Assembly: GCF_963853765.1 (NCBI RefSeq)
Contig: NC_088854.1
Span: 45,942,001 to 46,006,000 of the forward strand
DNA: 64,000 bases
Source: Magallana gigas
Lineage: Eukaryota
Direction: 5' to 3'
Positions 1 to 23,653 of this stretch are shown in pieces. Made by a program: the position numbers and the translations under genes. Numbering within the stretch: the first letter of the stretch is position 1; each line of letters opens with the position of its first letter. The notes beneath the pieces were generated by a model that did not search any database, was not told the DNA's origin, and saw nothing but the letters and a program-made list of their open reading frames with translations.

Positions 1-1549
1 CTTTCATGTACAAGTTATTCACATCATCTTATATATTTAGTTTTACAGTGCATACACATCATATATTCACTTCATTTGAGATTTAGAATATAAGTATAAT
101 ATAGACACAGTCACATAACGAAGATAAAAAAGCACATGTACAGACAAGTGTATACACCGACAGACAGACGTATATATGCACAAACAATCTCGAAAACTTG
201 CTTTCAGAAATTAACATAGAATTATAATAAAACAAAATATTCGGAAATGTATTTATTGGCCAATAAATCTCTCATCGACCGTAGAAACTAAAATATACAT
301 ATAAAGACAAATGAATTCAAAGCACAAATCACACACCAACGCTAGATCAATCACAACGACAACTGATTACCCTTATGGCACGTCATACTATTACTTATTA
401 GGTTAGTTACTGACTCACTACGCCTCGCTTTCGATAAGTTTGGCAAGTATCTAGTACATTTCGGAAAGATGTGTTTATTATGCAGCGTACAGATGTAGTC
501 AGACGATAGGAATAAGTAATTTTAACATTCTACAACCTATATATCGTCAGAAATCGTTGGAGAAACGGAAGAACTTGTTTAAAACATAGCTTGAAATGAG
601 GACCCCCTATAAATCCAAAATGGCGAGTGTCGTCCCTTTACTTTTTTTAATGTACATTGAATACACTTTTTTAACATGATTGAAACGGGGGGTTTCGGTG
701 AATTTATTTATTGCAATACACAAAAATACACATAAGATTACCAATTTTAATCAATTTTTTCTTCGGGAACAAATAATTAGGATATTCACTATCCAACAAC
801 CAAGCCCCTGTGATTAAAGTATTCTCGTGCAAAATGTGACATAAAGTAAGCATTAAAGATTTTAATTGACTGATAACTGCAATGCGATAAGAATCTGTAA
901 TAAACAAAATACAAATGAAAATGACAGGTATTGGTTTCCATAGAAAAATAATTCAATAAACCTTTCACATAGAATTAAGTAATGCAACATATCTTAAATA
1001 TATTCTATAAATAAATTCATTAATTGAATAGAAAATAATGAGTTAAAACCGTAATCAATTGACTTTATTAAACTGACTACGTAATTATCAAGTTCAAAAT
1101 GTAATGTTTGTCGACGAAATGGCGCACCATACTTGAAGCACATGGTAAACTAAAATCCATCGGTAACAAGAATATGCAAAACTAAGCATAGTTGACAATA
1201 AAGACAGAGGTAAATTACATCACTAGAAGATTAATAATACATAATTATAACAGTCAAAACACTTACACAGTGGAATTCAAGGCTTACAAAAAACTGTAGT
1301 AATCGAGCGTTTAGAAATATGGCGCAGTACTCCACCCATAAACAAACAAGTCGTACACAAAATCTTTCGTACAAAATACATGTAGTAATCAAAATAAGAT
1401 ATGCACAAGACATAACAGAAATAAAAGTTAACGTTGTACACAAGATAAGCACACAAGATATTTATAATTTTATATTAATGAAATGGTTTGTTAGCTTGCT
1501 TCTTATATCCCAAAATGATGTTTTGATATTTTCCATTATTTTTTTTTAA

Positions 1550-4536
1550 GATTCCGTTCCGTTCCGTTAAATACCAATATCCACACGGGTAATGGTATTT
1601 TGCGGAACGGAACGGAACGGAATCATAAGAAAATTATTCAAAAGTTTCGTAACAACATTTGTTATATCATTATTCATTTCAATGTATAACAAACAAGCTA
1701 TAGGTTAGCTTTTTAAAAAGAAAGTTAAGAAAGTCAGCCAGCGGAATATTATTTTTGGTCAAACGTGAATACACAATCTATTAAAATACGGGTAATGTAG
1801 TTTTCAGAAGAATGATAATAGGCAAGTGTATTTTTAGTTTGCACGCTTATTTTCATGTCTGTATGCATATGTGCGGAGAGAAGCTTATATATTATAGCAA
1901 TGTACTTACATTGTACGATTGCAAATCTACTTATTACTTAAAATTGTAATTTGCAAGATTGCACTCTGAATTTCATGGTCCTGTCGCAAACTACTGCCGA
2001 TGCATTTTCTCTCCAATCTCACTAAGCTGATTCCGAAGACCCCGGCCCGTGAACGCAGACGATACTTATGGGCAGTCTTTCAAGATATATATCCAGTTTG
2101 ACCTAGACTCTTCGAGTTTCTCTAACAAGGACTGTCTAATTCCTTCCCAGAATTTTAATTTACGGAAGCGCAATTGAAGTTTAATCCCAACTTAATAAGT
2201 CAGCCCACTCATAAGGCTATCAAGTATTTATTTTTAAAAATGATTATAACCCTGCAAATGGATTTGATATAAACTTTGACTTGATGTAAACATTGTCTTT
2301 CGCTAGCTTGATTAACCAACTAGCTAATTCTTCCTAAAAAAATCAAATAATTCATTATATAATGAATAAATGTTGCCTTTGTAAAAATATGTTTCACATT
2401 TTAAAAAGTTTGAAAGATTCCGTTCCGTTCCGTTAAATACCAATATCCACACGGGTAATGGTATTTTGCGGAACGGAACGGAACCAGAAGAAAATTGTTC
2501 AGACGGAAGGTAAGTGATGAATATTAAACTTTTTCCTTGCGAATGTGTTCGTTATATGTTAGAATTCTACGTAATATGGGATACACATTGCGTTATAAAC
2601 TAGTAATATCATCCGTGTAAGTAATGTAGTATCATAGATGAAATAAAAGTTATAGCTGTACTCAACACAGGAGTGATATGCACATATGCAAGATGTTTGA
2701 ATTGATGAAATGATTTGTTGGTTTGCTTCATTTATCTCAAAATAACATAGAAATAAACAAACAGCTAGTAGTTGTTATGATATATCTTATATTTCAAAAT
2801 TTTTAAACGGTTCCGTTCCGTTCCGTTAAATACCAATATCCACACGGGTAATGGTATTTTGCGGAACGGAACGGAACCAGAAGTAAATTATTTATAAGTA
2901 TGGTAACAACATTTGTTACATTATCATTCATTCAAATTTATTTCAAATAAGACTATCAAGTATTTTTATCGATATTATCCCTGCGCTGCGAATGATCTTG
3001 GTATAATATGAATTCTACTTGATATAAGCATTATGTTTTTGCTAGCTTAATTAACCAACTAGTTAGTTCTGCCGTGACAATGATATGAAATTGATAAAAA
3101 AAAAAACAAAAACAGAGTTGTTGTTGTATGCAGCACACGCACACAAACGCTGAAATTAATAATCAGCAAATACACAAGATGACTGAATTGATTTGATTGA
3201 TAGACTCATTCATCTTTAAAGAATCTGATAAAAAAAATTCAAGGAACGGTGAGTAGTTGTTATGATATTTTCCATTATTTAAAATGTTTGAAAGATTCCG
3301 TTACGTTCCGTTAAATACCAATATCCACACGGGTAATGGTATTTTGCGGAACGGAACGGAACCAGAAGAAAATTGTTCAGACGGAAGGTAAGTGATGAAT
3401 ATTAAACTTTTTCCTTGCGAATGTGCTCGTTATATTTTAGAATTCTACGTAATATGGGATACACATTGCGTTATTGCTAGCTTGATGAACAAACTAGTAA
3501 TATCATCCGTGTAAGTAATGTAGTATCATAGATGAAATAAAAGTTATAGCTGTACACAACACAGGAGTGATATGCACATATGCAAGATGTTTGAATTGAT
3601 GAAATGATTTGTTGCTTTGCTTCATTTATCTCAAAAGAACATAGAAATAAACAAACAGCTAGTAGTTGTTATGATTTATTTTATATTTCAAAATTTTTAA
3701 ACGGTTCCGTTCCGTTCCGTTAAATACCAGTATCCACACGGGTAATGGTATTTTGCGGAACGGAACGGAACCAGAAGAAAATTGTTCAGACGGAAGGTAA
3801 GTGATGAATATTAAACTTTTTCCTTGCGAATGTGTTCGTTATATTTTAGAATTCTACGTTATATGGGATACACATTGCGTTATTGCTAGCTTGATGAACA
3901 AACTAGTAATATCATAATATCCGTGTAAGTAATATAGTATCATAGATGAAATAAAAGTTATAGCTGTACACAACACAGGAGTGATATGCACATATGCAAG
4001 ATGTTTGAATTGATGAAATGATTTGCTTTATTTATCTCAAAAGAACATAGAAATAAACAAACAGCTAGTAGTTGGTATGATGTTTTCCTTTATTTAAAAA
4101 GTTTGAAAGATTCCGTTCCGTTCCGTTAAATACCAATATCCACACGGGTAATGGTATTTTGCGGAACGGAACGGAACCAGAAGAAATCTATTCAGAAGAA
4201 AGATTACTTAAGTAATTTTCATCGACTTTACACACACAGATTAATTGAGTTTGGTTTAAACCTCAACTTTATATTTACAGTGTCAATCAAACATCATAAA
4301 ACAACTAGTGACTTTAGGTTTTCTCGGGAAAGAAGCGTGTATTGACTTATAGAGCAATGAGTAGCATATTTTATGTAATACACAGTTCATTAAAACAGCA
4401 AAATTTGTAAAACAATCTTCCATTTACGATAAGTTAAATTGAAATAATGACGTTTAAAAAAAATATTGTTTCCCCTTTTGGGGCCTCTTAACTGGTTCCG
4501 TTCCGTTCCGTTCCGTTCCGCAAAGTACCAATAGCC
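1550..4536. repeat. Tandem array of ~400-bp TIR-bounded (MITE-like) units joined by six near-identical ~70-bp palindromic junctions
   Basis: The core (G/A)TTCCGTTCCGTTCCGTTAAATACCAATATCC-ACAC-GGGTAATGGTATTTTGCGGAACGGAACGGAA occurs at 1550-1624, 2416-2485, 2809-2878, 3294-3363, 3703-3772 and 4109-4178. Periods measured at ACAC are 866, 393, 485, 409 and 406 bp. A closing inverted half-copy lies at 4492-4536. Interiors are homologous but diverged. Confidence 0.9.
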
Positions 4537-4584
4537 ATTTTTCTTTCTTGGTGTATTAAGGGGTTTTTTCTTCTCTCATCCAGT

Positions 4585-4746
4585 TTACTTTGTATAAAAG
4601 ACTATAGCTCGATTCATCTTTGTATATTCGACTTTCAATTTGTGGCAGACTTCATGATCATCGTGTAAGCATTTCATAAAGTTAGCACGGTCTTCATGCC
4701 TTAAATAAACTTCATTAACACCCAAGTACGTAAGTACCATGGTTAT
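4585..4746 (-). CDS. Candidate isolated exon, unknown product (ITMVLTYLGVNEVYLRHEDRANFMKCLHDDHEVCHKLKVEYTKMNRAIVFYTK*)
   Basis: Minus-strand acceptor TTTTTTGCAG at 4747-4748, then 53 open codons to TAA. A possible donor lies at 4588. No family recognised and no partner exon found. Confidence 0.25.
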   Translation of the reverse strand: MTMVLTYLGVNEVYLRHEDRANFMKCLHDDHEVCHKLKVEYTKMNRAIVFYTK

Positions 4747-5904
4747 CTGCAAAAAATGTAAGTTTTAGCTGAATACAACCAAAAAATGAAGGCAATCAAA
4801 ACAAAGACAGTAAAGTTGAATAAACTAAATGTAGAATAAAAAGAAAATAATTTGAAAATTAAAGACAAACACAATGAACCAAAGAAAGTTACATGAAAAT
4901 GGAAAAAAAATAATGAAATAAAATAAAAATATCAGACAGAAATTGTTTATCTTTTCTTTTAAAAGTAATATATGTTTACCTTTGTATGGAAAAATTCAGT
5001 CACTATGTCACTCTGTAATTTATGAAACCCTAAAACGAGACAAACAAATTAATAATATATTTTTATGAAAATAATATTGTCAATCTGCGTTCTTAATATC
5101 AATATGTATGAAAATACTATACTGAACTAAAACGATATCGACTATTTCAAGGGCAGTTAATTTGATTAAAACAAAATAAATGTGTTGACTAATCTACCTA
5201 CATTTTAAAAAAAACGTGCAAAAATGCAGAGAAAAGCTTCCATTTCATTAACCATTAATATGATTTGAAAAACCATTAATAGCATCATGTCTCTATGGAT
5301 GCCACTGATTCTTGTAGAAGTCAAGGGATCACAGAAAATACAAATGTAAAGACCTGTGCTGTGGATATACTTTTACTGTTGTTATTTTATTTCAAGAAAA
5401 TTAACAGACTTTCAGAGGTTCCTGGCAAAGCACAAAGTAAACCAAAACAGAAACACAAACACGGCTTACACACTACTGTCATCAACATCAGAGTAAATCA
5501 AGTAATTTTTACCTCGATCTGTCTCTAAACAGTCTAGGATCCAATATCCATTCACTATATTATGCATATATGGCTACCAGAGTTCTGCTTCACACACCTC
5601 ATGTACCTTCCAATTGTTACTTTTTTAGGATTAAGATGGCGTTGACTGTAATAGGTACTTTACAAAACACAAGCGCATTTCTCCTTCAGCTGGTCAATGT
5701 ATTTTGTCAAAATGTATAATCTATAAGTGAACAGGGAAAATGTACCTCACCACGCTCATATGAAATTATAAAGAAGTGGGTCTCTCCACTTATAAACTGA
5801 CGTTGTTTACCTGCTGGTGTGAACTTGCTTAACCTTTCATAATATTACTTGACTAGCTGTACCATGCGTATCACGTGACAGAGATTTTGGCAAGCGCGTT
5901 CGAC

Positions 5905-6942: not shown

Positions 6943-7072
6943 NNNNNNNNNNNNNNNNNNNNNNNNNNNNNNNNNNNNNNNNNNNNNNNNNNNNNNNNNN
7001 NNNNNNNNNNNNNNNNNNNNNNNNNNNNNNNNNNNNNNNNNNNNNNNNNNNNNNNNNNNNNNNNNNNNNNNN
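6943..7072. other. Assembly gap (130 N)
   Basis: Run of N in the sequence. Confidence 1.
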
Positions 7073-9624: not shown

Positions 9625-12508
9625 ATGGAGATGTTTAATAAGCTATTTAAGAATAGTGAGTCTTTATTAAATTACTATATGATTTTATCAATACTTTTTG
9701 AATACATTTTTGTGGATTTCATTAATTATTTGATTCATGGGATTGAAATTGAAATTTAACAAATCGAAATTTTATTGATTCATGGGATCAATTAAATCTA
9801 AGCATATTCCACTGAAAGGATTATTGTAATTTTTGTATCCTTGAAACTGTCATTTGCAGTAAATCTATAAAAATTGGTACCCACAAATATTAATGCAACC
9901 ACAGGATTTTAGATTATCTGATTTATAACTTTGTTAGATGAAATGTAAGAATAATTTAGTACAAGTATATTAAACAGACAATTTAGAAATAAGAGATTTT
10001 AAATAATCGAGGTCAATGTAGAAATCATTATGTTCACTCAGCTTTCACATGTACCAGTACTTAGCCCATCAAATATATAAAATAATGTAGAGTTGTAGAT
10101 AAATGACATTCAAGATCCTCTTTTAGTACAAAATGAACGTGATTATCATATCAATAAGACATATGCAATATATTACAGACTAATATGATATATCATCTTG
10201 GCTAAAACAAAGCATCTTTAATCAAACTAATTTGCTTATACTGATAATTGACAAGCTAATTAGCATTTCAGTCCAACACTTTGCTAAGTAATAAAGTGTG
10301 ATGCGTTGAATTTACCAGTATTGTAAAGAAATTTTTAGACACTGTTGATGAACTTTTAACTGTAACAGTTAAAATCTATGCAACTCCCATTGACGGCAGT
10401 TTATTTTTGGCAATTACTTCCCTGTTTCTTGCTCAATGCAATGTACACACTTGCACACATTACATAAGGAATAAGGAATCATTCTTCGAGTATTATGAGG
10501 TGATAATTTTGGTCGGGGCATGATCAAATCCAATAAAGCCCGAAGGGCTTTATTGTAGATTTGAACACGCCCCGACCGAAATTATCACCTTATAATATTC
10601 AAAGAATGATTCCTTATTACTTATATTTATATGATTTTAAGCCATCGTACGATTAAACATTTAAATATAAATAAGCAAACCCCCCTGGCGCCTCAATTTG
10701 GCGTCATTTGTATTATGGGTTATATAGTACAAAATCGATAGGTAGTGTTATCATAGGCAAAGACACTGGAAAACGTAAATATATGTATTTAATGCTATTT
10801 TTTTTCATATTATGATTTGTATTAACATTGTTACCCTTGTAGTCTGTATAATTGAATACTCATGCAATCTCATATGGAAGGAAATAAAAATTGAGTGAAT
10901 GAATCATCCAAGATCATTGTAAGTAATTTTGAAATTGTAGAGGCATCTAAGTCAAACTGGGTGTGCCATAAGTGTAAAAATGAGGTGGACCAAGGAGAAA
11001 AATGCAAAACATGTCATAGATGGTTTAATAAGAAAAAAGATGAAGAAGTAAACTGTGCAAGAAATGAACAAAATACAAAAGAAGCATTGGATGGGGCCAC
11101 TGGTAATTCTGGTGATGATCAATTAAGTAGAATAAATTGTGATGTCGGCGGAGAAAGAGGGATTGAAACAGTCAATAGTAGTGGATGGACTTGTAAGATC
11201 TGCTACATAAGTGGGAATCAAAGTACTGAATGTAAGATGTGTAAACAAACCAAAAAGGATTTGAGTGACGAAGATAACATCAAGAATAGAAGGAAGAGGA
11301 AGAACCTCAACAGAAGCAGGCTCAAGGCGGGTCACAGTGTAAGAGTGAAGGACGAACTGGATAAGCAGAGAAAAGTTGCTAGGGATATTGCCAGAAACAT
11401 TACAGATTATTGCAACAAGGTAAAATTAAGCACTGGTTTTTTGTTAAGAATTAAAACTAATTTTAAAAAAAGAAGTACCGGTAATGATAAATCAATTTTT
11501 TAACCGGGTTTTCCAACGGAAAAATTCGGTTATTAAAATGGTGAAAATGGCGGGTTGGTGGGTAGGTGGCTGCTAAAAGGGTACCCTCATTGTACGGATA
11601 ACTTCTCCTACAGTTTTCAAGATTGGAAGTTATTCTTATGCAGATCAATTGTACATATATCAGAGGTGTGCATATTGCTAGGATTTTGATTTCTGTTTAT
11701 TTATGAAAAAAATACCAGCTTTTGAACTTAGTCATTTTTTGACCAAACATATCATATAGGGTACCCTAATTGTACGGATAACTCCTCCTACAGTTTTCAA
11801 GATAAGAAGTTGTTCTTTTGCAGATCAATTAGAGGTGTGCATATTGCTAGGATTTTGATTTCTGATAATTTATGAAAAAAATACCAGCTTTTGAACTTAG
11901 TCATTTTTTGACCAAACATATCATATAGGGTACCCTCATTGTACGGATAACTCCTCCTACAGTTTTCAAGATAGGAAGTTGTTCTTTTGCGGATCACTTG
12001 TACATATATTAGAGGTGTGCATATTGCTAGGATTTTGATTTCTGATAATTTATGAAAAAAATACCAGCTTTAGAACTTAGTCATTTTTTGACAAAATATT
12101 GAATATAGGGTACTCCATTTCACTGGATACGGTTGGTAGTGTTTATCAATTCAGGGTTGACATGGATTATGGATACAGTTCAAATAAAAGAAAACCTGGT
12201 TTGCTGTCACATTGACAGCTTTTCACTTGTTTTTTATTGGATTAAATCAATGCTGCTCTTTAATTTATTGCAGAATAATATTCATTATGAAGACAAGGGC
12301 TTTCCTGATTCAAATGCCCCTAAACGAGATGAAGGGCAATGGCAAAGAATAGGCCAAATTCAGGACAAAAGCTGTAAAGGAAAAGAATCTTGGACCATTT
12401 TCCGGAACCCCAGTCCTGATGATGCTATACAGGGGGAAGCAGAAAACTGTTGGTATGGAAGTCCTTATATTGCAATAAAGCTACGATAAATAGATGTCTA
12501 TTTCATGC

Positions 12509-20445: not shown

Positions 20446-21627
20446 CTACATATCGTCATCGTCGTCGCTGGACTCGTCAGAGGACAAGATGACCGGCTGA
20501 TAGTCCGGACGGAAATTATCTGCCGTTGTCACGGTGTCACGTGAACTGAAATCAAACTTCAGATTTTTGAAAGTGAGGCTTTTTAGATCCAAGTTACCCA
20601 CATGCCTGTTGTACTCATCTTCCGGAGTTCCGGGTACTTGCTCGTATTTAATACCTGATATTTCCTTCATCGCTGCCCTGAGTCTCAGTGTATAATAGTC
20701 TCTGTCTTCAATGTCATCCACTACCAAGTCATTCAAGGTGTCTACAAACTCTTGGATTTTCTGGTCATAATTCAAAGACTTGGTCGCTTTTAACTGTAAT
20801 TCGACAACATCGATTTTCTTCTCATCCTCAAAGAAACTGGAGGATTTCTTTCTGTGGTTCTCTTGTTCTGATGGCCGCCGTGACCCGGATGTTGCATCTT
20901 TGGTGACTTGCTGCAACAGGGACGGTCCGCATGTGTGAGGCCGCGCTTTCTGCTTCACCGGCAAATCTAACGTCAGTTTGTTGTTCTGTTTCTTTCCTTT
21001 GGTGGCAATACTCAGCTGGATGTCTTTTTTGAGGGGCAGGGATTGGACGCTGACTTCTACCTCCCGCTGTTGTGGACGACTCCCCGTGGTGGATGGTCGA
21101 TCTACGGTGGGCAGGGGTAGACCTGCTAGGGTACCTGTCGATCGTGACGTCATGCATTCACTGACAGAGTTGCTTCTCCGTCGAGTACCATTGCCGTCCA
21201 TAAATACGTCATCGACAAGTTCCTTTTGAGTGTCTTTTGGAATGGTGACTGTAATTTTTGGATGTTTTTTCTGTTTATTTTGCTGCGACTTTTTCCGGTT
21301 GCTCTGAAGTTTTGTGAGGAACTCGTAATCCTTTTCGACACTACCAAAATCAGTGTTTAATCCATGGAGATTTTTGGCCCGAAGTTCTCTTTCTATTTCT
21401 TTATTTCCATGCATGCGCGCCTCACATAATTTAGATCTATACAACTTATCCTGAAATCGTTTGAATAACACTTTTTGGTCTATTTTGATTCTATGAATTA
21501 CATTTTTCTCACTTCTTTCCAACACATGCATTTGTTTTTTCAATAAGATAGTTTCCTTCCAATTTGCATAATGCACTGATGGAGACTTTTCAGCATTTTC
21601 ACCCGTTTTCCATCCTTGCGATGTCAT
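20446..21627 (-). CDS. Uncharacterised intronless 393-aa protein; N-terminal predicted coiled coil, low-complexity basic/Ser-rich middle, acidic tail
   Basis: Long ORF with higher GC than its flanks. Helical heptad-like segment WKETILLKKQMHVLERSEKNVIHRIKIDQKVLFKRF is loosely reminiscent of CCDC190-like proteins (unverified). The true start is uncertain (see finding at 21599-21751). Confidence 0.7.
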   Translation of the reverse strand: MTSQGWKTGENAEKSPSVHYANWKETILLKKQMHVLERSEKNVIHRIKIDQKVLFKRFQDKLYRSKLCEARMHGNKEIERELRAKNLHGLNTDFGSVEKDYEFLTKLQSNRKKSQQNKQKKHPKITVTIPKDTQKELVDDVFMDGNGTRRRSNSVSECMTSRSTGTLAGLPLPTVDRPSTTGSRPQQREVEVSVQSLPLKKDIQLSIATKGKKQNNKLTLDLPVKQKARPHTCGPSLLQQVTKDATSGSRRPSEQENHRKKSSSFFEDEKKIDVVELQLKATKSLNYDQKIQEFVDTLNDLVVDDIEDRDYYTLRLRAAMKEISGIKYEQVPGTPEDEYNRHVGNLDLKSLTFKNLKFDFSSRDTVTTADNFRPDYQPVILSSDESSDDDDDM

Positions 21628-22036
21628 CTTGAACCTCTTGCGGCTTGACTGGCCGTGATTCTTTCAACATTTGTTTGTAGTGGGGTGCGTTTTTATCAGC
21701 TGTCGTTTGTACAATCTCTTGTTCTGTAACATAGTCGAGTACCTTTGTTTCTTATCGTGCAAAACGAATATATTCATTCCACTTTCATTTAATTTATGCG
21801 GCCATGGAAGTTCATTGATAACAACTGCTTTCACAAACGTGTAATTATCTTTAAGTCAACATAACTGCGATAGCTTACGTACAACTGTCGATTTACAGCT
21901 TCTAGAAGCCATTCCAATTCGGAAGTGTTATTTTTGCATGCTTTCGTACATGTTGGATTGAACCCCATAAGCCCCAAAAATACCTTTACGCTGAATTGCT
22001 TTATCCTTATCTATTGTTCTTGTGTCATGATTTATT

Positions 22037-23653
22037 TTATTTGTAGCTCTTGTTAAGGAGAACAGAAACAAAGCATATCCACACATTCATCAAAGTTAAT
22101 CCTGCGTTTGATTGCACCGCACGATTCGACTCGAACTTTCCTGGGCACCAAACTATCCTTTCACTCCTGTTACAAAACCCATGTAGCTGTTCCTCAAGTT
22201 TAGAGCTTCCAAGCTCATACACAGTATTACGTAGTTTGCAAAAACCTGTTAATCCCATGTCAAAAATGGTGCCACTGTGCAAAATTTCTTCAACGTCACA
22301 ATCGCATTCGAGTGGATTACCCGTTATATCTACGTAACTGAAAGAGCATAGGGGTGCATGGACAATAAATGAAATGTCCGATATATTATTGTTGTCTAAG
22401 TCGAGTCCAATCGAGTGTCGCATGTTTGAGAATGCTGAGGGAGATATGTGCACGAGGCTGTTATTACTCATGACCAGAGTTTTAATTGATAAAGTAGATA
22501 AACTGGTATCAAACGTTTGCCTATGGAAATGGTTATGAGATACGTCCAAGTATGATAGCATTTTGAGAGGGGCTAGAGAAGACACGGGTATACTTGTCAT
22601 CCCTACTTCCCTCAGAAACAAAGTCTCTAGCGAATTTTCTAGTCCCTGGAATGTAGTTTTGGTAAAGGTCAGTGGGTTGCTGTCAAGATAAAGCATGTCT
22701 AGCTGGTAATTGCCCTGAAATGCATTGTGGATGGTTCTGATGTCGTTTTTTGATATTTTTAAAAACAGAAGTTTCCTTAGTGGTTTCAACGCGGCAGACG
22801 GTATCTGTTGTAGATAATTACCATGAAGCTCGAGTTCTTTGAGACTCTCTTCCAGTCCTGCAAAGGCGCCATTTTCTATCGAAGACAGTTCGTTGTAGTC
22901 TAGAACTATTTTTTCCAAACTTGTCAAAGAGTGAAAACTGTTTGTTGCTATTGTTGATAAGTCGTTTCCACCCAGGAATAGCTTTTGCAGATTTCGCAGA
23001 TGTAACAATGCCGATGGCACATTTTCTAAATAATTATAGGTGAGATCGATCTCTTTGATTGATTCCAATCCGACGAATGCCCGCGGCCCTATGGAAGTGA
23101 TTCCGCAGGAACTCAAACTCAGTTTGCGAAGCGAGTGTAAACGCAGATCTCTGAAAATGTCATTTGGGAGGACCTGGATATCATTTTGATAATTATGGAT
23201 CATATTTGAATCCATTATAAGCTCTGTTAGAACACTTAAATCTTTCATGAACATTAAGTCTTGATCGATGGCTATTCGATTGCGTGCCAAATTGAGCTTT
23301 GTTATATAGGGTGCAAGCTGTGAGAGAGCCCCGATGGCGTGGTTCTCCAATGTGTTTTTGCTTAAATCTAGCTCTGTGATGTTCTTAAAACCCAAATCCG
23401 ATAGGGAGATTGAAGATATATTGTTTCCGCGCAGTAAAAGCTTTGTCACGTTGCGGTTTGACAGGGATGATAAATTAGGCATCGTTTTTAGATTTGCATG
23501 GCTGCAGTTCACGATGGTCAGTCTGTCATTGTTCCACCAGACGTCTTCTCGGCACGTGCATGACGTCTGCTTCTCCAGAACGGGGCAACGGAAGTCAGCG
23601 AATGACTTCATGGTGAACATAAATAAGGCAATCGCAAGAGTTAACAGAATCAT
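22037..23653 (-). CDS. Extracellular leucine-rich-repeat protein (signal peptide, LRRNT, LRR array, LRRCT, hydrophobic C-terminus)
   Basis: 538-aa ORF. Signal peptide MILLTLAIALFMFTMKSFA, CP..CTC cap, many LxxLxLxxN repeats, GNPLECDC cap, hydrophobic tail. A 5'UTR acceptor lies just upstream (~23669) and a candidate upstream donor at 24178. Confidence 0.92.
   Translation of the reverse strand: MILLTLAIALFMFTMKSFADFRCPVLEKQTSCTCREDVWWNNDRLTIVNCSHANLKTMPNLSSLSNRNVTKLLLRGNNISSISLSDLGFKNITELDLSKNTLENHAIGALSQLAPYITKLNLARNRIAIDQDLMFMKDLSVLTELIMDSNMIHNYQNDIQVLPNDIFRDLRLHSLRKLSLSSCGITSIGPRAFVGLESIKEIDLTYNYLENVPSALLHLRNLQKLFLGGNDLSTIATNSFHSLTSLEKIVLDYNELSSIENGAFAGLEESLKELELHGNYLQQIPSAALKPLRKLLFLKISKNDIRTIHNAFQGNYQLDMLYLDSNPLTFTKTTFQGLENSLETLFLREVGMTSIPVSSLAPLKMLSYLDVSHNHFHRQTFDTSLSTLSIKTLVMSNNSLVHISPSAFSNMRHSIGLDLDNNNISDISFIVHAPLCSFSYVDITGNPLECDCDVEEILHSGTIFDMGLTGFCKLRNTVYELGSSKLEEQLHGFCNRSERIVWCPGKFESNRAVQSNAGLTLMNVWICFVSVLLNKSYK

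What the first reader, a model, noticed from the sequence alone, without database searches (positions are those of the whole stretch)
1550..4536. Cassette-like array: diverged ~400-bp units joined by invariant palindromic junctions
Seen: six near-identical ~70-bp palindromes (only isolated substitutions at 3303 and 3730 and small edge variants) separate units whose interiors fall into types. Units 2453-2841, 3331-3735 and 3740-4141 are near-identical. Units 1587-2448 and 2846-3326 form a second, more diverged type, and 4146-4536 a third. Each junction reads as right TIR + ACAC + left TIR, and the array closes with a free TIR at 4492-4536 that differs from the internal ones. So the array is head-to-tail TIR elements in the order A-B-A'-B-B-C, always joined by the same 4 bp and the same four arm asymmetries. 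Inference: plain tandem duplication should let junctions diverge with interiors. Identical junctions between unlike units suggest either repeated site-specific integration of circular elements at the junction (tyrosine-recombinase logic, as in integrons or Crypton-type elements, with inverted arms around an asymmetric core), or self-targeted MITE insertion, or selection/conversion acting on the hairpin. No recombinase is encoded in this window.
Basis: partly seen in the sequence, partly recalled or inferred. Interest (0 to 1): 0.75.

Follow-up and report, generated by a model that had tools for sequence, protein, structure and literature searches.

The report
Satellite-bearing arm of oyster foldback transposon
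The "cassette array" is real, but it is one of two mirror-image arms of a 7.9-kb gene-less foldback-type DNA transposon of an oyster; its repeats are the catalogued satellite CgiSat35, so it is a new example of a known kind of element.

Summary
Six near-identical 66-bp imperfect palindromes (right half-site, ACAC, left half-site) separate unlike ~350-860-bp units, and a different free end closes the array at 4536.

The array is not a stand-alone cassette array. It is the right arm of a 7,887-bp element (G000:C2:45938650-45946536). A mirror-image arm lies just upstream of the window, and a ~2.9-kb centre lies between them with no Pfam-matching ORF. About 25-30 copies are dispersed over the chromosomes. 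They have GG..CC termini and 8-bp target-site duplications (four perfect, ours 7/8), and they keep the same unit order with different unit numbers.

The repeat matches satellite CgiSat35 of Crassostrea gigas. Interiors of different unit types are 68-77% alike or unalignable, but the 31-bp half-sites stay about 100% identical, with a sharp edge. Three half-site classes (outer, left, right) stay distinct even in an older relative that is 70-78% alike. This fits selection on transposase-binding sites, not repeated integration.

Nearly all right half-sites genome-wide sit in full junctions (259 versus 280), so there is no visible population of solo units. The transposase was not found. Termini and duplication length fit Merlin weakly and do not fit IS3EU, the label published for CgiSat35. 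Verdict: a new member of a known kind.

The parts
1..1551 (.). Right part of the ~2.9-kb centre of the element. The rest is upstream of the window, at L031:8718-10000.
   Evidence: It is 96-99% identical over its aligned blocks to the centres of 5 other copies. No ORF of 180 aa or more lies here, and the longest open frames have no Pfam match.
1552..1617 (+). Junction palindrome J1 (right half-site 1552-1582, ACAC 1583-1586, left half-site 1587-1617), at the boundary of centre and arm.
   Evidence: DNA hairpin of -29.2 kcal/mol, z = -9.3.
1587..2448 (+). Unit A (862 bp), the innermost unit of this arm. It is a D/A'-like unit with a ~480-bp extra segment.
   Evidence: A aligns to D at positions 1-136 and 620-857 with 74-77% identity.
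2418..2483 (+). Junction J2
2453..2841 (+). Unit B (389 bp), inner-B subtype.
2811..2876 (+). Junction J3
2846..3326 (+). Unit A' (481 bp).
   Evidence: It is 98% identical to the A' unit of the opposite arm.
3296..3361 (+). Junction J4, with a substitution at 3303.
   Evidence: RNA reads, presumably from other copies of the family, show C at 3303.
3331..3735 (+). Unit B (405 bp), inner-B subtype.
3705..3770 (+). Junction J5, with a substitution at 3730.
3740..4141 (+). Unit B (402 bp), outer-B subtype, which always lies next to unit C.
   Evidence: clade support 99.
4111..4176 (+). Junction J6
4146..4536 (+). Unit C (391 bp), the terminal unit. Its interior is unrelated to the other units.
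   Evidence: It differs at 1 of 391 positions from unit C of the left arm; the interiors are identical.
4492..4536 (+). Outer terminal inverted repeat (O-type half-site plus five GGAAC repeats), the true right end of the mobile element.
   Evidence: It mirrors the left end at L031:6650. The 19-nt terminus occurs 47 times perfectly in the genome.
4537..4544 (.). Right copy of the 8-bp target-site duplication (ATTTTTCT; the left copy is ATTTGTCT, one mismatch).
   Evidence: Perfect 8-bp duplications occur at three other full copies and at a 666-bp derivative.

Best explanation
Window 1552-4536 is the right arm of a non-autonomous, foldback-type cut-and-paste DNA transposon, 7,887 bp long at G000:C2:45938650-45946536, in an oyster genome (very likely Crassostrea/Magallana gigas). 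The layout is an outer TIR, then [C-B-A'-B-D] reversed, then a ~2.9-kb centre with no Pfam-matching ORF, then [A-B-A'-B-B-C] and an outer TIR. The arm repeats are the catalogued satellite CgiSat35.

Shown: the whole element is the mobile unit. It has 8-bp target-site duplications and GG..CC termini, and about 25-30 copies are dispersed through the genome.

Inferred: it is moved in trans by a transposase that was not found here. The 66-bp junctions are back-to-back pairs of TIR-like half-sites. They most likely act as internal, uncleaved transposase-binding sites, as shown for Galileo and proposed for Tetris. They would be kept by selection in transposing lineages while unit interiors drift.

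Shown: the number of units varies between copies while the order is conserved. Inferred: the variation comes from unequal recombination at the identical junctions. The array probably arose once, by tandem multiplication of one MITE-like unit together with its single junction. It did not arise by many separate insertions.
For: A mirror arm and shared outer termini flank the window array.

8-bp duplications: AATAATCC, CAACTTTC and TGAAATAC at three full copies, GTTCAGCC at a 666-bp two-unit derivative, 7/8 at our copy, and 7 nt retained at a copy that lost one end.

The 29-nt terminus occurs 40 times perfectly and pairs up at distances of 5-23 kb. The 19-nt terminus occurs 47 times perfectly.

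Centres of the six compared copies are 96-99% alike over their aligned blocks, and no transposase ORF or Pfam match was found in the centres examined.

The unit order is conserved in 7 copies while unit numbers differ, and A'-B dimers are amplified in one copy. B units cluster by position, not by copy (support 99).

Across unlike unit types, identity is 95-100% for the first 30 nt on each side of ACAC, 65-77% at 31-40 nt, and at background beyond about 70 nt. Interiors are 68-77% alike or unalignable.

Within unit types, half-sites differ from the consensus at 0.47% of sites against 1.83% for interiors (p = 1e-13). Copy-private changes are not significantly fewer in half-sites (0.33% against 0.55%, p = 0.05-0.07). 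That pattern is what selection in transposing lineages predicts.

An older relative whose interior is only 70-78% alike has a perfect outer half-site and 0-2 mismatches in its left and right half-sites, and the three classes are still distinct.

The CgiSat35 consensus contains our junction and adjoining unit sequence. Its 0.02% genome share is consistent with the copy numbers seen here.

Published analogues: Tetris and Galileo (PMC4079207).
Against: No transposase was found, so cut-and-paste mobilisation in trans, and the role of the half-sites as binding sites, are inferred only.

Two copies deviate from the 8-bp rule. One full copy (C4:257) has no clean duplication. One old 765-bp derivative has an 11-nt flanking repeat instead.

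Selection on every one of 10 or more internal junctions is a strong demand. Homogenisation by gene conversion is not excluded, because copy-private changes are still somewhat fewer in junctions.

How the first junction, with its ACAC spacer, arose is unknown.

Short-read contigs cannot confirm the unit order at this locus.
Confidence: 0.8

Rival explanations
1. The junctions stay identical through gene conversion or repair, not through selection. The palindromes would extrude as hairpins or cruciforms, break, and be repaired from other junction copies, which homogenises them. The element is still a foldback transposon under this reading.
For: The hairpin is strong. Copy-private changes are somewhat fewer in half-sites (0.33% against 0.55%, p about 0.05-0.07). 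At least 100 of the 259 junction cores are perfect over 42 nt.
Against: The conserved block ends sharply at about 31 nt on each side rather than decaying with distance. The four arm asymmetries and the three half-site classes (outer, left, right) remain distinct, even in a relative that is 70-78% alike; free conversion should blur them. Opposite arms of one copy are not markedly more alike than arms of different copies (1.4-2.1% against 1.8-2.5%).
Confidence: 0.15
2. The array grew by joining of abutted ends, like a circle junction or signal joint. The transposase would join the right and left ends of MITE-like units with a short spacer, as in bacterial IS dimers, and such junctions would remain reactive.
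For: The junction has the form right end, 4 bp, left end. The published Repbase label for CgiSat35 is IS3EU, a superfamily related to IS3. IS3-type elements transpose through circles with abutted ends separated by a spacer.
Against: The spacer is the same 4 bp almost everywhere, although the family's duplication is 8 bp, and the cited rule is that the spacer has the length of the duplication. The internal half-sites differ consistently from the outer, cleaved ends at 3-4 positions. The unit order is inherited as a block. The IS3EU hallmarks, TA..TA termini and a 6-bp duplication, are not met.
Confidence: 0.08
3. One reading: an integron- or Crypton-like cassette array built by repeated site-specific integration of circular units at the junction by a tyrosine recombinase.
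For: The junctions between unlike units are invariant and have an asymmetric core.
Against: No recombinase is present in the window, in the centres of the copies examined, or in their nested inserts. The same cassette order recurs in 7 copies that carry transposon-type 8-bp duplications. The interiors are diverged homologues of each other, apart from C, rather than unrelated cassettes.
Confidence: 0.03
4. Self-targeted insertion of single MITEs into the junction, or a Helentron-borne satellite, which is the usual carrier of oyster satellites.
For: The units look like MITEs with inverted ends. Most abundant C. gigas satellites are associated with Helitron/Helentron elements (abstract of PMC8268682).
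Against: Insertion by this family would leave 8-bp duplications around each unit, but a constant ACAC is seen. Genome-wide there are 259 full junction cores against 280 right half-sites, so free unit ends are rare. The element has TIRs and 8-bp duplications, which by general knowledge of the family are not Helentron features.
Confidence: 0.03

Closest known systems
Tetris (Drosophila virilis) and Galileo (D. buzzatii), foldback-type DNA transposons
   Same: Long inverted arms built of tandem repeats, a non-coding middle, and no transposase in the copies found. The arm repeats contain a copy of terminal sequence: a 37-bp match in Tetris, and extra transposase-binding sites in Galileo. The arm repeats double as a satellite, and Tetris has 8-10-bp duplications (PMC4079207).
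   Different: Here each repeat boundary carries two TIR-like half-sites back to back, forming a 66-bp palindrome, so each unit looks like a complete MITE. The units have diverged into five types in a fixed order. The host is a bivalve. The superfamily is undetermined.
CgiSat35, a catalogued satellite DNA of Crassostrea gigas (Tunjic-Cvitanic et al. 2021, PMC8268682)
   Same: The published consensus contains our junction and adjoining A', B and C sequence. Its genome share of 0.02% fits about 25-30 elements.
   Different: The paper lists it as a 690-bp monomer with a Repbase hit to DNA/IS3EU. In the text searched it does not describe the foldback transposon, the palindromic junctions or the unit types. 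The 690-bp consensus appears to be a composite of several unit types.
Other foldback transposons of the same genome noted by this scan (carrying CgiSat25 and CgiSat33)
   Same: The same architecture: arms made of satellite arrays, no coding capacity, duplications of 7 bp or more, and tens of copies (unchecked notes).
   Different: The repeat units there are different and much shorter (86-105 bp). No palindromic double half-site junction is reported for them.
KolobokP composite-like transposons of bivalves (Kojima and Bao 2022, PMC9587614)
   Same: Found in the Pacific oyster. Terminal modules of ~450 or ~660 bp have their own short TIRs, the termini are RR..YY, and multimers arise by unequal crossover.
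   Different: KolobokP modules are direct repeats flanking a coding region and make 3-5-bp duplications. Here the arms are inverted, the duplication is 8 bp, and there is no coding region.
Merlin superfamily (related to IS1016/IS1595)
   Same: Terminal 5'-GG, TIRs of 24-462 bp, and 8-9-bp duplications (PMC8101967). The genome has 27 matches to the Merlin transposase domain.
   Different: None of those matches lies inside a copy. The one intact Merlin gene inspected has unrelated ends. The one Merlin fragment 4.5 kb from a copy lies outside that copy.

Membership tests
Foldback-type DNA transposon (a structural class) | Two long inverted arms that make up most of the element and are built of tandem repeats | tested here: met
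   The arms are 2.1 and 3.0 kb of a 7.9-kb element, and the mirror order of units is seen in 7 copies.
Foldback-type DNA transposon (a structural class) | Mobility as a unit: dispersed copies flanked by target-site duplications | tested here: met
   Four perfect 8-bp duplications and one 7/8. There are 47 perfect termini spread over 9 of the 10 large contigs, none on C7.
Foldback-type DNA transposon (a structural class) | The middle domain lacks a transposase in most copies | tested here: met
   No long ORF and no Pfam match in the centres. The only domain found is a nested retrotransposon fragment.
CgiSat35 satellite | Sequence identity to the published consensus | tested here: met
   An exact 14-nt junction query hit only CgiSat35, and the printed consensus shows our junction and unit sequence around it.
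IS3EU/GingerRoot (the published Repbase label of CgiSat35) | TA..TA termini | tested here: not met
   The termini are GG..CC. The rule is taken from PMC10045372.
IS3EU/GingerRoot (the published Repbase label of CgiSat35) | 6-bp target-site duplication | tested here: not met
   The duplications are 8 bp.
Merlin | 8-9-bp duplication and terminal 5'-GG | tested here: met
   The rule is taken from PMC8101967.
Merlin | A DDE_Tnp_IS1595 transposase encoded by the element or by a partner with matching ends | tested here: inconclusive
   There are 27 matches in the genome and none inside a copy (one search compared). One intact gene was inspected and its ends do not match.
hAT | 8-bp duplication together with YARNG termini | tested here: not met
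   The duplication length fits, but the termini begin GGCTA. The terminal rule rests on general knowledge of the family.
Mutator/Foldback (MULE) | Duplications of 9-10 bp typically (8-10 bp in Tetris) and a MULE transposase | tested here: inconclusive
   8 bp is at the low edge of the range. The transposase was not searched for.
Helentron / HINE (the usual carrier of oyster satellites) | Insertion between T and T without a duplication, with asymmetric ends and a 3' hairpin | tested here: not met
   The ends are symmetric TIRs with 8-bp duplications. The rule rests on general knowledge of the family.
KolobokP | Long terminal direct repeats, 3-5-bp or TTAA duplications, and a transposase plus a His-Me nuclease | tested here: not met
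   The arms are inverted, the duplication is 8 bp and nothing is encoded.
Integron or Crypton type cassette array | A tyrosine recombinase and independent site-specific integration of cassettes | tested here: not met
   No recombinase is present in the window or in the copies examined. The order of units is inherited as a block.
microRNA precursor families (Rfam) | A score at or above the family's gathering threshold | tested here: not met
   The best match is mir-76 at 33 bits against a threshold of 75, which is only a generic hairpin resemblance.

The most novel reading that the evidence does not exclude
The palindromic junctions may be preserved abutted-end joints, that is right end, 4-bp spacer, left end, as in the circle junctions and tandem dimers of bacterial IS3/IS30-type elements. 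Under this reading a eukaryotic transposase multimerises MITE-like units head to tail and may still use such junctions as reactive ends. That would be a eukaryotic counterpart of IS dimer chemistry, and a transposase-driven route from a MITE to a satellite.
Probability: 0.08. Interest if true: 0.7.

Novelty: new member of a known kind. Interest (0 to 1): 0.33.

Why it matters
The result gives a catalogued oyster satellite, CgiSat35, a concrete genomic carrier: apparently most or all of it sits in the arms of about 25-30 copies of one foldback-type transposon. It also shows that the published IS3EU label does not fit the element's termini or its duplication length.

It adds a third family, after the CgiSat25 and CgiSat33 carriers noted by this scan, to the picture that oyster satellites travel on non-autonomous DNA transposons other than Helentrons.

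The fixed order of diverged units, and three separately conserved half-site classes, make the element a convenient natural test case. It could show how internal transposase-binding sites are maintained and how a MITE-like unit becomes a satellite.

For annotation, the practical point is that the locus should be masked as one 7.9-kb mobile element and not treated as a cassette array.

Tried and rejected
1. Search for an autonomous partner.
- The larger copies owe their extra length to more units or to unrelated sequence. C4:547 (11.6 kb) has more units and a 4.3-kb centre; it shows no ORF over 119 aa in the centre. The 10 kb fetched from the C4:452 copy (17.4 kb) are mostly unrelated sequence without ORFs.
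- C4:486 has a 7.9-kb centre with a nested retrotransposon RNase H fragment.
- 9.3 kb inside the 23-kb pair on C10 are unrelated and hold no ORF above 120 aa.
- An unpaired end on C8 abuts an ankyrin-repeat gene, not a transposase.

2. Merlin. The genome has 27 domain matches, none inside a copy. One intact gene has unrelated ends. The fragment 4.5 kb from an old copy lies outside that copy.

4. Flip-flop inversion of the centre. The apparent inversions are simply whole elements lying in the opposite orientation, because the arms are asymmetric, with A on one side and D on the other.

5. I briefly thought there was a second subfamily with a different centre. That was an artefact of my own BLAST filter.

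6. Arm-to-arm homogenisation within a copy was not seen.

7. Use of internal half-sites as transposition ends was not seen. The one copy that lacks an outer end has a 39-nt terminal deletion next to a retained duplication.

8. Rfam gave only sub-threshold hairpin matches.

9. The bacterial promoter and terminator scan is irrelevant to this eukaryotic sequence.

10. Reads. Short-read contigs break at the junctions and cannot test the unit order.
Full report
**1. The observation**

Reading window 1300-4900 and the repeat search confirm six copies of a 66-76-nt imperfect palindrome. They lie at 1552-1617, 2418-2483, 2811-2876, 3296-3361, 3705-3770 and 4111-4176. Each consists of a 31-nt right half-site, ACAC, and a 31-nt left half-site.
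- The two half-sites differ at the same four positions in all six copies.
- The only substitutions are at 3303 and 3730.
- A 15-mer of the arm occurs 16 times in the window and never in 100 shuffles.
- As single-stranded DNA the junction folds into a hairpin of -29.2 kcal/mol, z = -9.3.
- The units between junctions are A 862 bp, B 389, A' 481, B 405, B 402 and C 391.
- The array closes at 4536 with a third half-site variant followed inward by five GGAAC repeats.

**2. What surrounds it**

The window is G000:C2:45942001-46006000 of a 564-Mb assembly in 29 contigs. Hits to the junction come in pairs of clusters of opposite orientation a few kb apart. One such cluster lies just upstream of the window.

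I fetched the 10 kb before the window (L031) and five other loci and mapped the half-sites. The window array is the right arm of a 7,887-bp element. Its parts, from left to right, are:
- an outer end at L031:6650;
- a reversed array C-B-A'-B-D;
- a ~2.9-kb centre (L031:8718 to window 1551);
- the array A-B-A'-B-B-C;
- an outer end at window 4536.

The outer ends are inverted copies of one another and begin GGCTATTGGTAC.

Flanking 8-bp direct repeats are perfect at three other full copies (AATAATCC, CAACTTTC, TGAAATAC) and 7/8 at ours (ATTTGTCT / ATTTTTCT). One full copy has no clean duplication.

The 29-nt terminus occurs 40 times perfectly, in pairs 5-23 kb apart. The 19-nt terminus occurs 47 times perfectly and 11 times with one mismatch. 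That gives roughly 25-30 elements spread over the large contigs.

**3. Coding capacity**

The centres of the six compared copies are 96-99% identical over their aligned blocks. Their longest open frames are 80-150 codons and have no Pfam match.

The larger copies owe their size to extra units or to unrelated insertions.
- The 11.6-kb copy has eleven units in one arm and a 4.3-kb centre.
- The 10 kb fetched from the 17.4-kb copy hold mostly unrelated sequence without ORFs.
- The 13.6-kb copy has a nested retrotransposon fragment with an RT RNase H domain.
- 9.3 kb inside a 23-kb pair of ends on C10 are unrelated to the element.

The family is therefore non-autonomous in every copy examined.

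**4. The array is inherited as a block**

All seven mapped copies have the same order from the outside in: C, outer-B, optionally another B, A', inner-B, then A on one arm and D on the other. A is a D/A'-like unit with a ~480-bp extra segment.

Unit numbers differ between copies. One copy has three extra A'-B dimers. This is what unequal exchange at identical junctions would produce.

In a tree of the 32 B-unit interiors, units fall into an outer-B and an inner-B clade (support 99). They group by position across copies, not by copy. Copies differ by about 2%. Opposite arms of one copy differ by 1.4-2.1%, which is no less than arms of different copies.

**5. Junctions versus interiors**

Between unit types:
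- Interiors are 68-77% alike (A/A'/D, A'/B), or unalignable in the case of C.
- Anchored at ACAC, identity among unlike types is 95-100% for 30 nt on each side.
- It falls to 65-77% at 31-40 nt and to about 50% at 41-60 nt.
- It is at background beyond about 70 nt.
- The conserved block therefore has a sharp edge, about the length of one half-site on each side.

Within unit types:
- Half-sites differ from the consensus at 0.47% of sites against 1.83% for interiors (p = 1e-13).
- The deficit lies mostly in variants shared between units.
- Copy-private changes are not significantly fewer (0.33% against 0.55%, p = 0.05-0.07).

An older relative (L044) is only 70-78% alike in its interior. It nevertheless has a perfect outer half-site, and its left and right half-sites carry 0-2 mismatches and keep their class-specific differences. 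Its spacers are GTGT and AGGT, read on the opposite strand.

Three half-site classes that stay distinct and are each conserved across such divergence argue for sequence-specific constraint. The most likely cause is recognition by the mobilising transposase. Free homogenisation or independent origin of the junctions fits this less well.

**6. Are there solo units?**

Genome-wide there are 280 right half-sites (up to one mismatch in 19 nt). There are 259 full 42-nt junction cores (up to three mismatches), and at least 100 of these are perfect. Right half-sites therefore hardly occur outside junctions.

The short derivatives I found are bounded by the outer ends, not by internal half-sites.
- A 666-bp two-unit element has a perfect 8-bp duplication, GTTCAGCC (L046).
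- An old 765-bp element has an 11-nt flanking repeat with one mismatch (L053).
- One copy lacks its left terminus through a 39-nt deletion next to a retained 7-nt duplicate.

I found no case of an internal half-site used as a transposition end.

**7. Identity of the repeat**

Two earlier notes of this scan describe foldback transposons in the same genome that carry CgiSat25 and CgiSat33. That led me to search the supplement of the C. gigas satellitome paper (PMC8268682). An exact 14-nt junction string hits only CgiSat35, and the printed consensus shows our junction with adjoining A', B and C sequence.

The paper lists CgiSat35 as a 690-bp monomer making up 0.02% of the genome, with a Repbase hit to DNA/IS3EU. 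The text I searched does not describe the carrier element.

IS3EU elements have TA..TA termini and 6-bp duplications (PMC10045372). Neither feature holds here.

**8. Superfamily**

- Merlin: terminal GG and an 8-bp duplication fit its definition (PMC8101967). The genome has 27 matches to the Merlin transposase domain, but none lies inside a copy. One intact gene has unrelated ends. The fragment 4.5 kb from an old copy lies outside it.
- Mutator-type foldback elements usually make 9-10-bp duplications; Tetris makes 8-10 bp.
- hAT termini do not fit.

The partner, and therefore the superfamily, remain open. My rough odds are Merlin one third, MULE/Foldback one quarter, and other superfamilies for the rest.

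**9. Reads**

In DNA contigs of two individuals the single-copy flank (4601-5500) has depth 7-10. The units have depth 60-1,000 and the junction bins 740-2,500, consistent with the copy numbers above. Contigs break at the junctions, so they cannot test the unit order.

A polyA RNA run gives low coverage on both strands over the element (up to 26 and 17 reads per bin) and none on the flank. This profile does not follow DNA copy number, which suggests some transcription of the family. DNA carry-over is not excluded.

One X4 contig reaches the right flank at 4539 and continues for 1,072 nt that do not lie on the stretch laid. It may be an empty-site or alternative allele. I could not read it.

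**10. Mechanism**

Shown:
- The 7.9-kb element is the mobile unit, bounded by outer TIRs and 8-bp duplications.
- The array is inherited whole.
- The number of units changes while their order is kept.
- The half-sites are conserved far beyond the interiors.

Inferred:
- Mobilisation is in trans by a cut-and-paste transposase.
- The internal half-site pairs serve as uncleaved accessory binding sites. This has been shown for the repeated THAP sites of Galileo and is proposed for Tetris.
- The array arose from one MITE-like unit and one junction by tandem duplication. This would explain why the same spacer and the same asymmetries are everywhere.
- Unequal exchange at the junctions causes the length variation.

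**11. Verdict**

This is a real and tidy structure, but it is an example of a known kind: a foldback-type non-autonomous DNA transposon whose arms are a satellite. The satellite itself is already catalogued.

The back-to-back half-site junction and the fixed order of diverged units are the unusual details. The reading that the junctions are abutted-end joints of IS-dimer type is not excluded, but it is unlikely (about 8%).

The run of N at window 6943-7072 was left alone. 

Noticed in passing
window 385-428: A ~40-nt stretch inside the element's centre has very high depth in DNA contigs (the 369-552 bin is about 4,100-4,400, against 7-10 for single-copy flank). Many loose ends sit at 385-393 and 422-428, and there is an opposite-strand joint at 422/428 in RNA reads. 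This is probably the edge of another very abundant short repeat or hairpin.
   Followed up: no
window 4539-5500 (run X4, contig record 24): A 2,034-nt contig from another individual matches the right flank from 4539 and continues for 1,072 nt that do not lie on window 1-5500. It may be an allele without the insertion, or with a different one.
   Followed up: no
window 1-4600, RNA run X21: PolyA RNA reads cover the element on both strands at low depth and are absent from the adjoining flank. The profile does not follow DNA copy number, so the family may be transcribed in both directions.
   Followed up: partly
L046:255-920 (G000:C6:56633555-56634220): A 666-bp two-unit deletion derivative with both outer ends, one central junction (spacer AGAC) and a perfect 8-bp duplication, GTTCAGCC. 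The family also moves as a MITE.
   Followed up: yes
L034:7340-7350 (G000:C2:15085340 region): One copy has lost exactly the outer 39 nt (TIR plus GGAAC repeats) of its left end, while 7 nt of the target duplication remain. It looks like a one-ended deletion after a failed excision.
   Followed up: partly
L053:201-965 (G000:C10:29214924-29215688): An old, degenerate 765-bp relative is flanked by an 11-nt direct repeat with one mismatch, instead of 8 bp.
   Followed up: no
L032:7222-10000 and L037:1-44 (C3 copy): One unit of the left arm is 2,823 bp long, presumably because another element has inserted into it.
   Followed up: no
L049:3752-4630 (G000:C4:48636652-48637530): A 293-codon open frame with an RT RNase H domain (a retrotransposon fragment) is nested in the centre of the 13.6-kb copy.
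   Followed up: yes
L031:9324-9820: The centre of the element contains its own diverged inverted repeat of about 500 nt (68% complementary).
   Followed up: no
window 11578-12113: A tandem repeat of a 169-bp unit, 3 copies, 88% matches.
   Followed up: no
window 20449-23653, minus strand: Two large open frames. The 538-codon frame is a leucine-rich-repeat protein (LRR_8, E = 9e-49). The 393-codon frame next to it has no Pfam match.
   Followed up: partly
L047:1953-3620 (G000:C8:48582853-48584520): A 555-codon ankyrin-repeat-like open frame, judged by eye from its translation, lies directly beside a truncated old copy of the element.
   Followed up: no
window 6943-7072: A run of 130 N (an assembly gap or masked stretch).
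   Followed up: no
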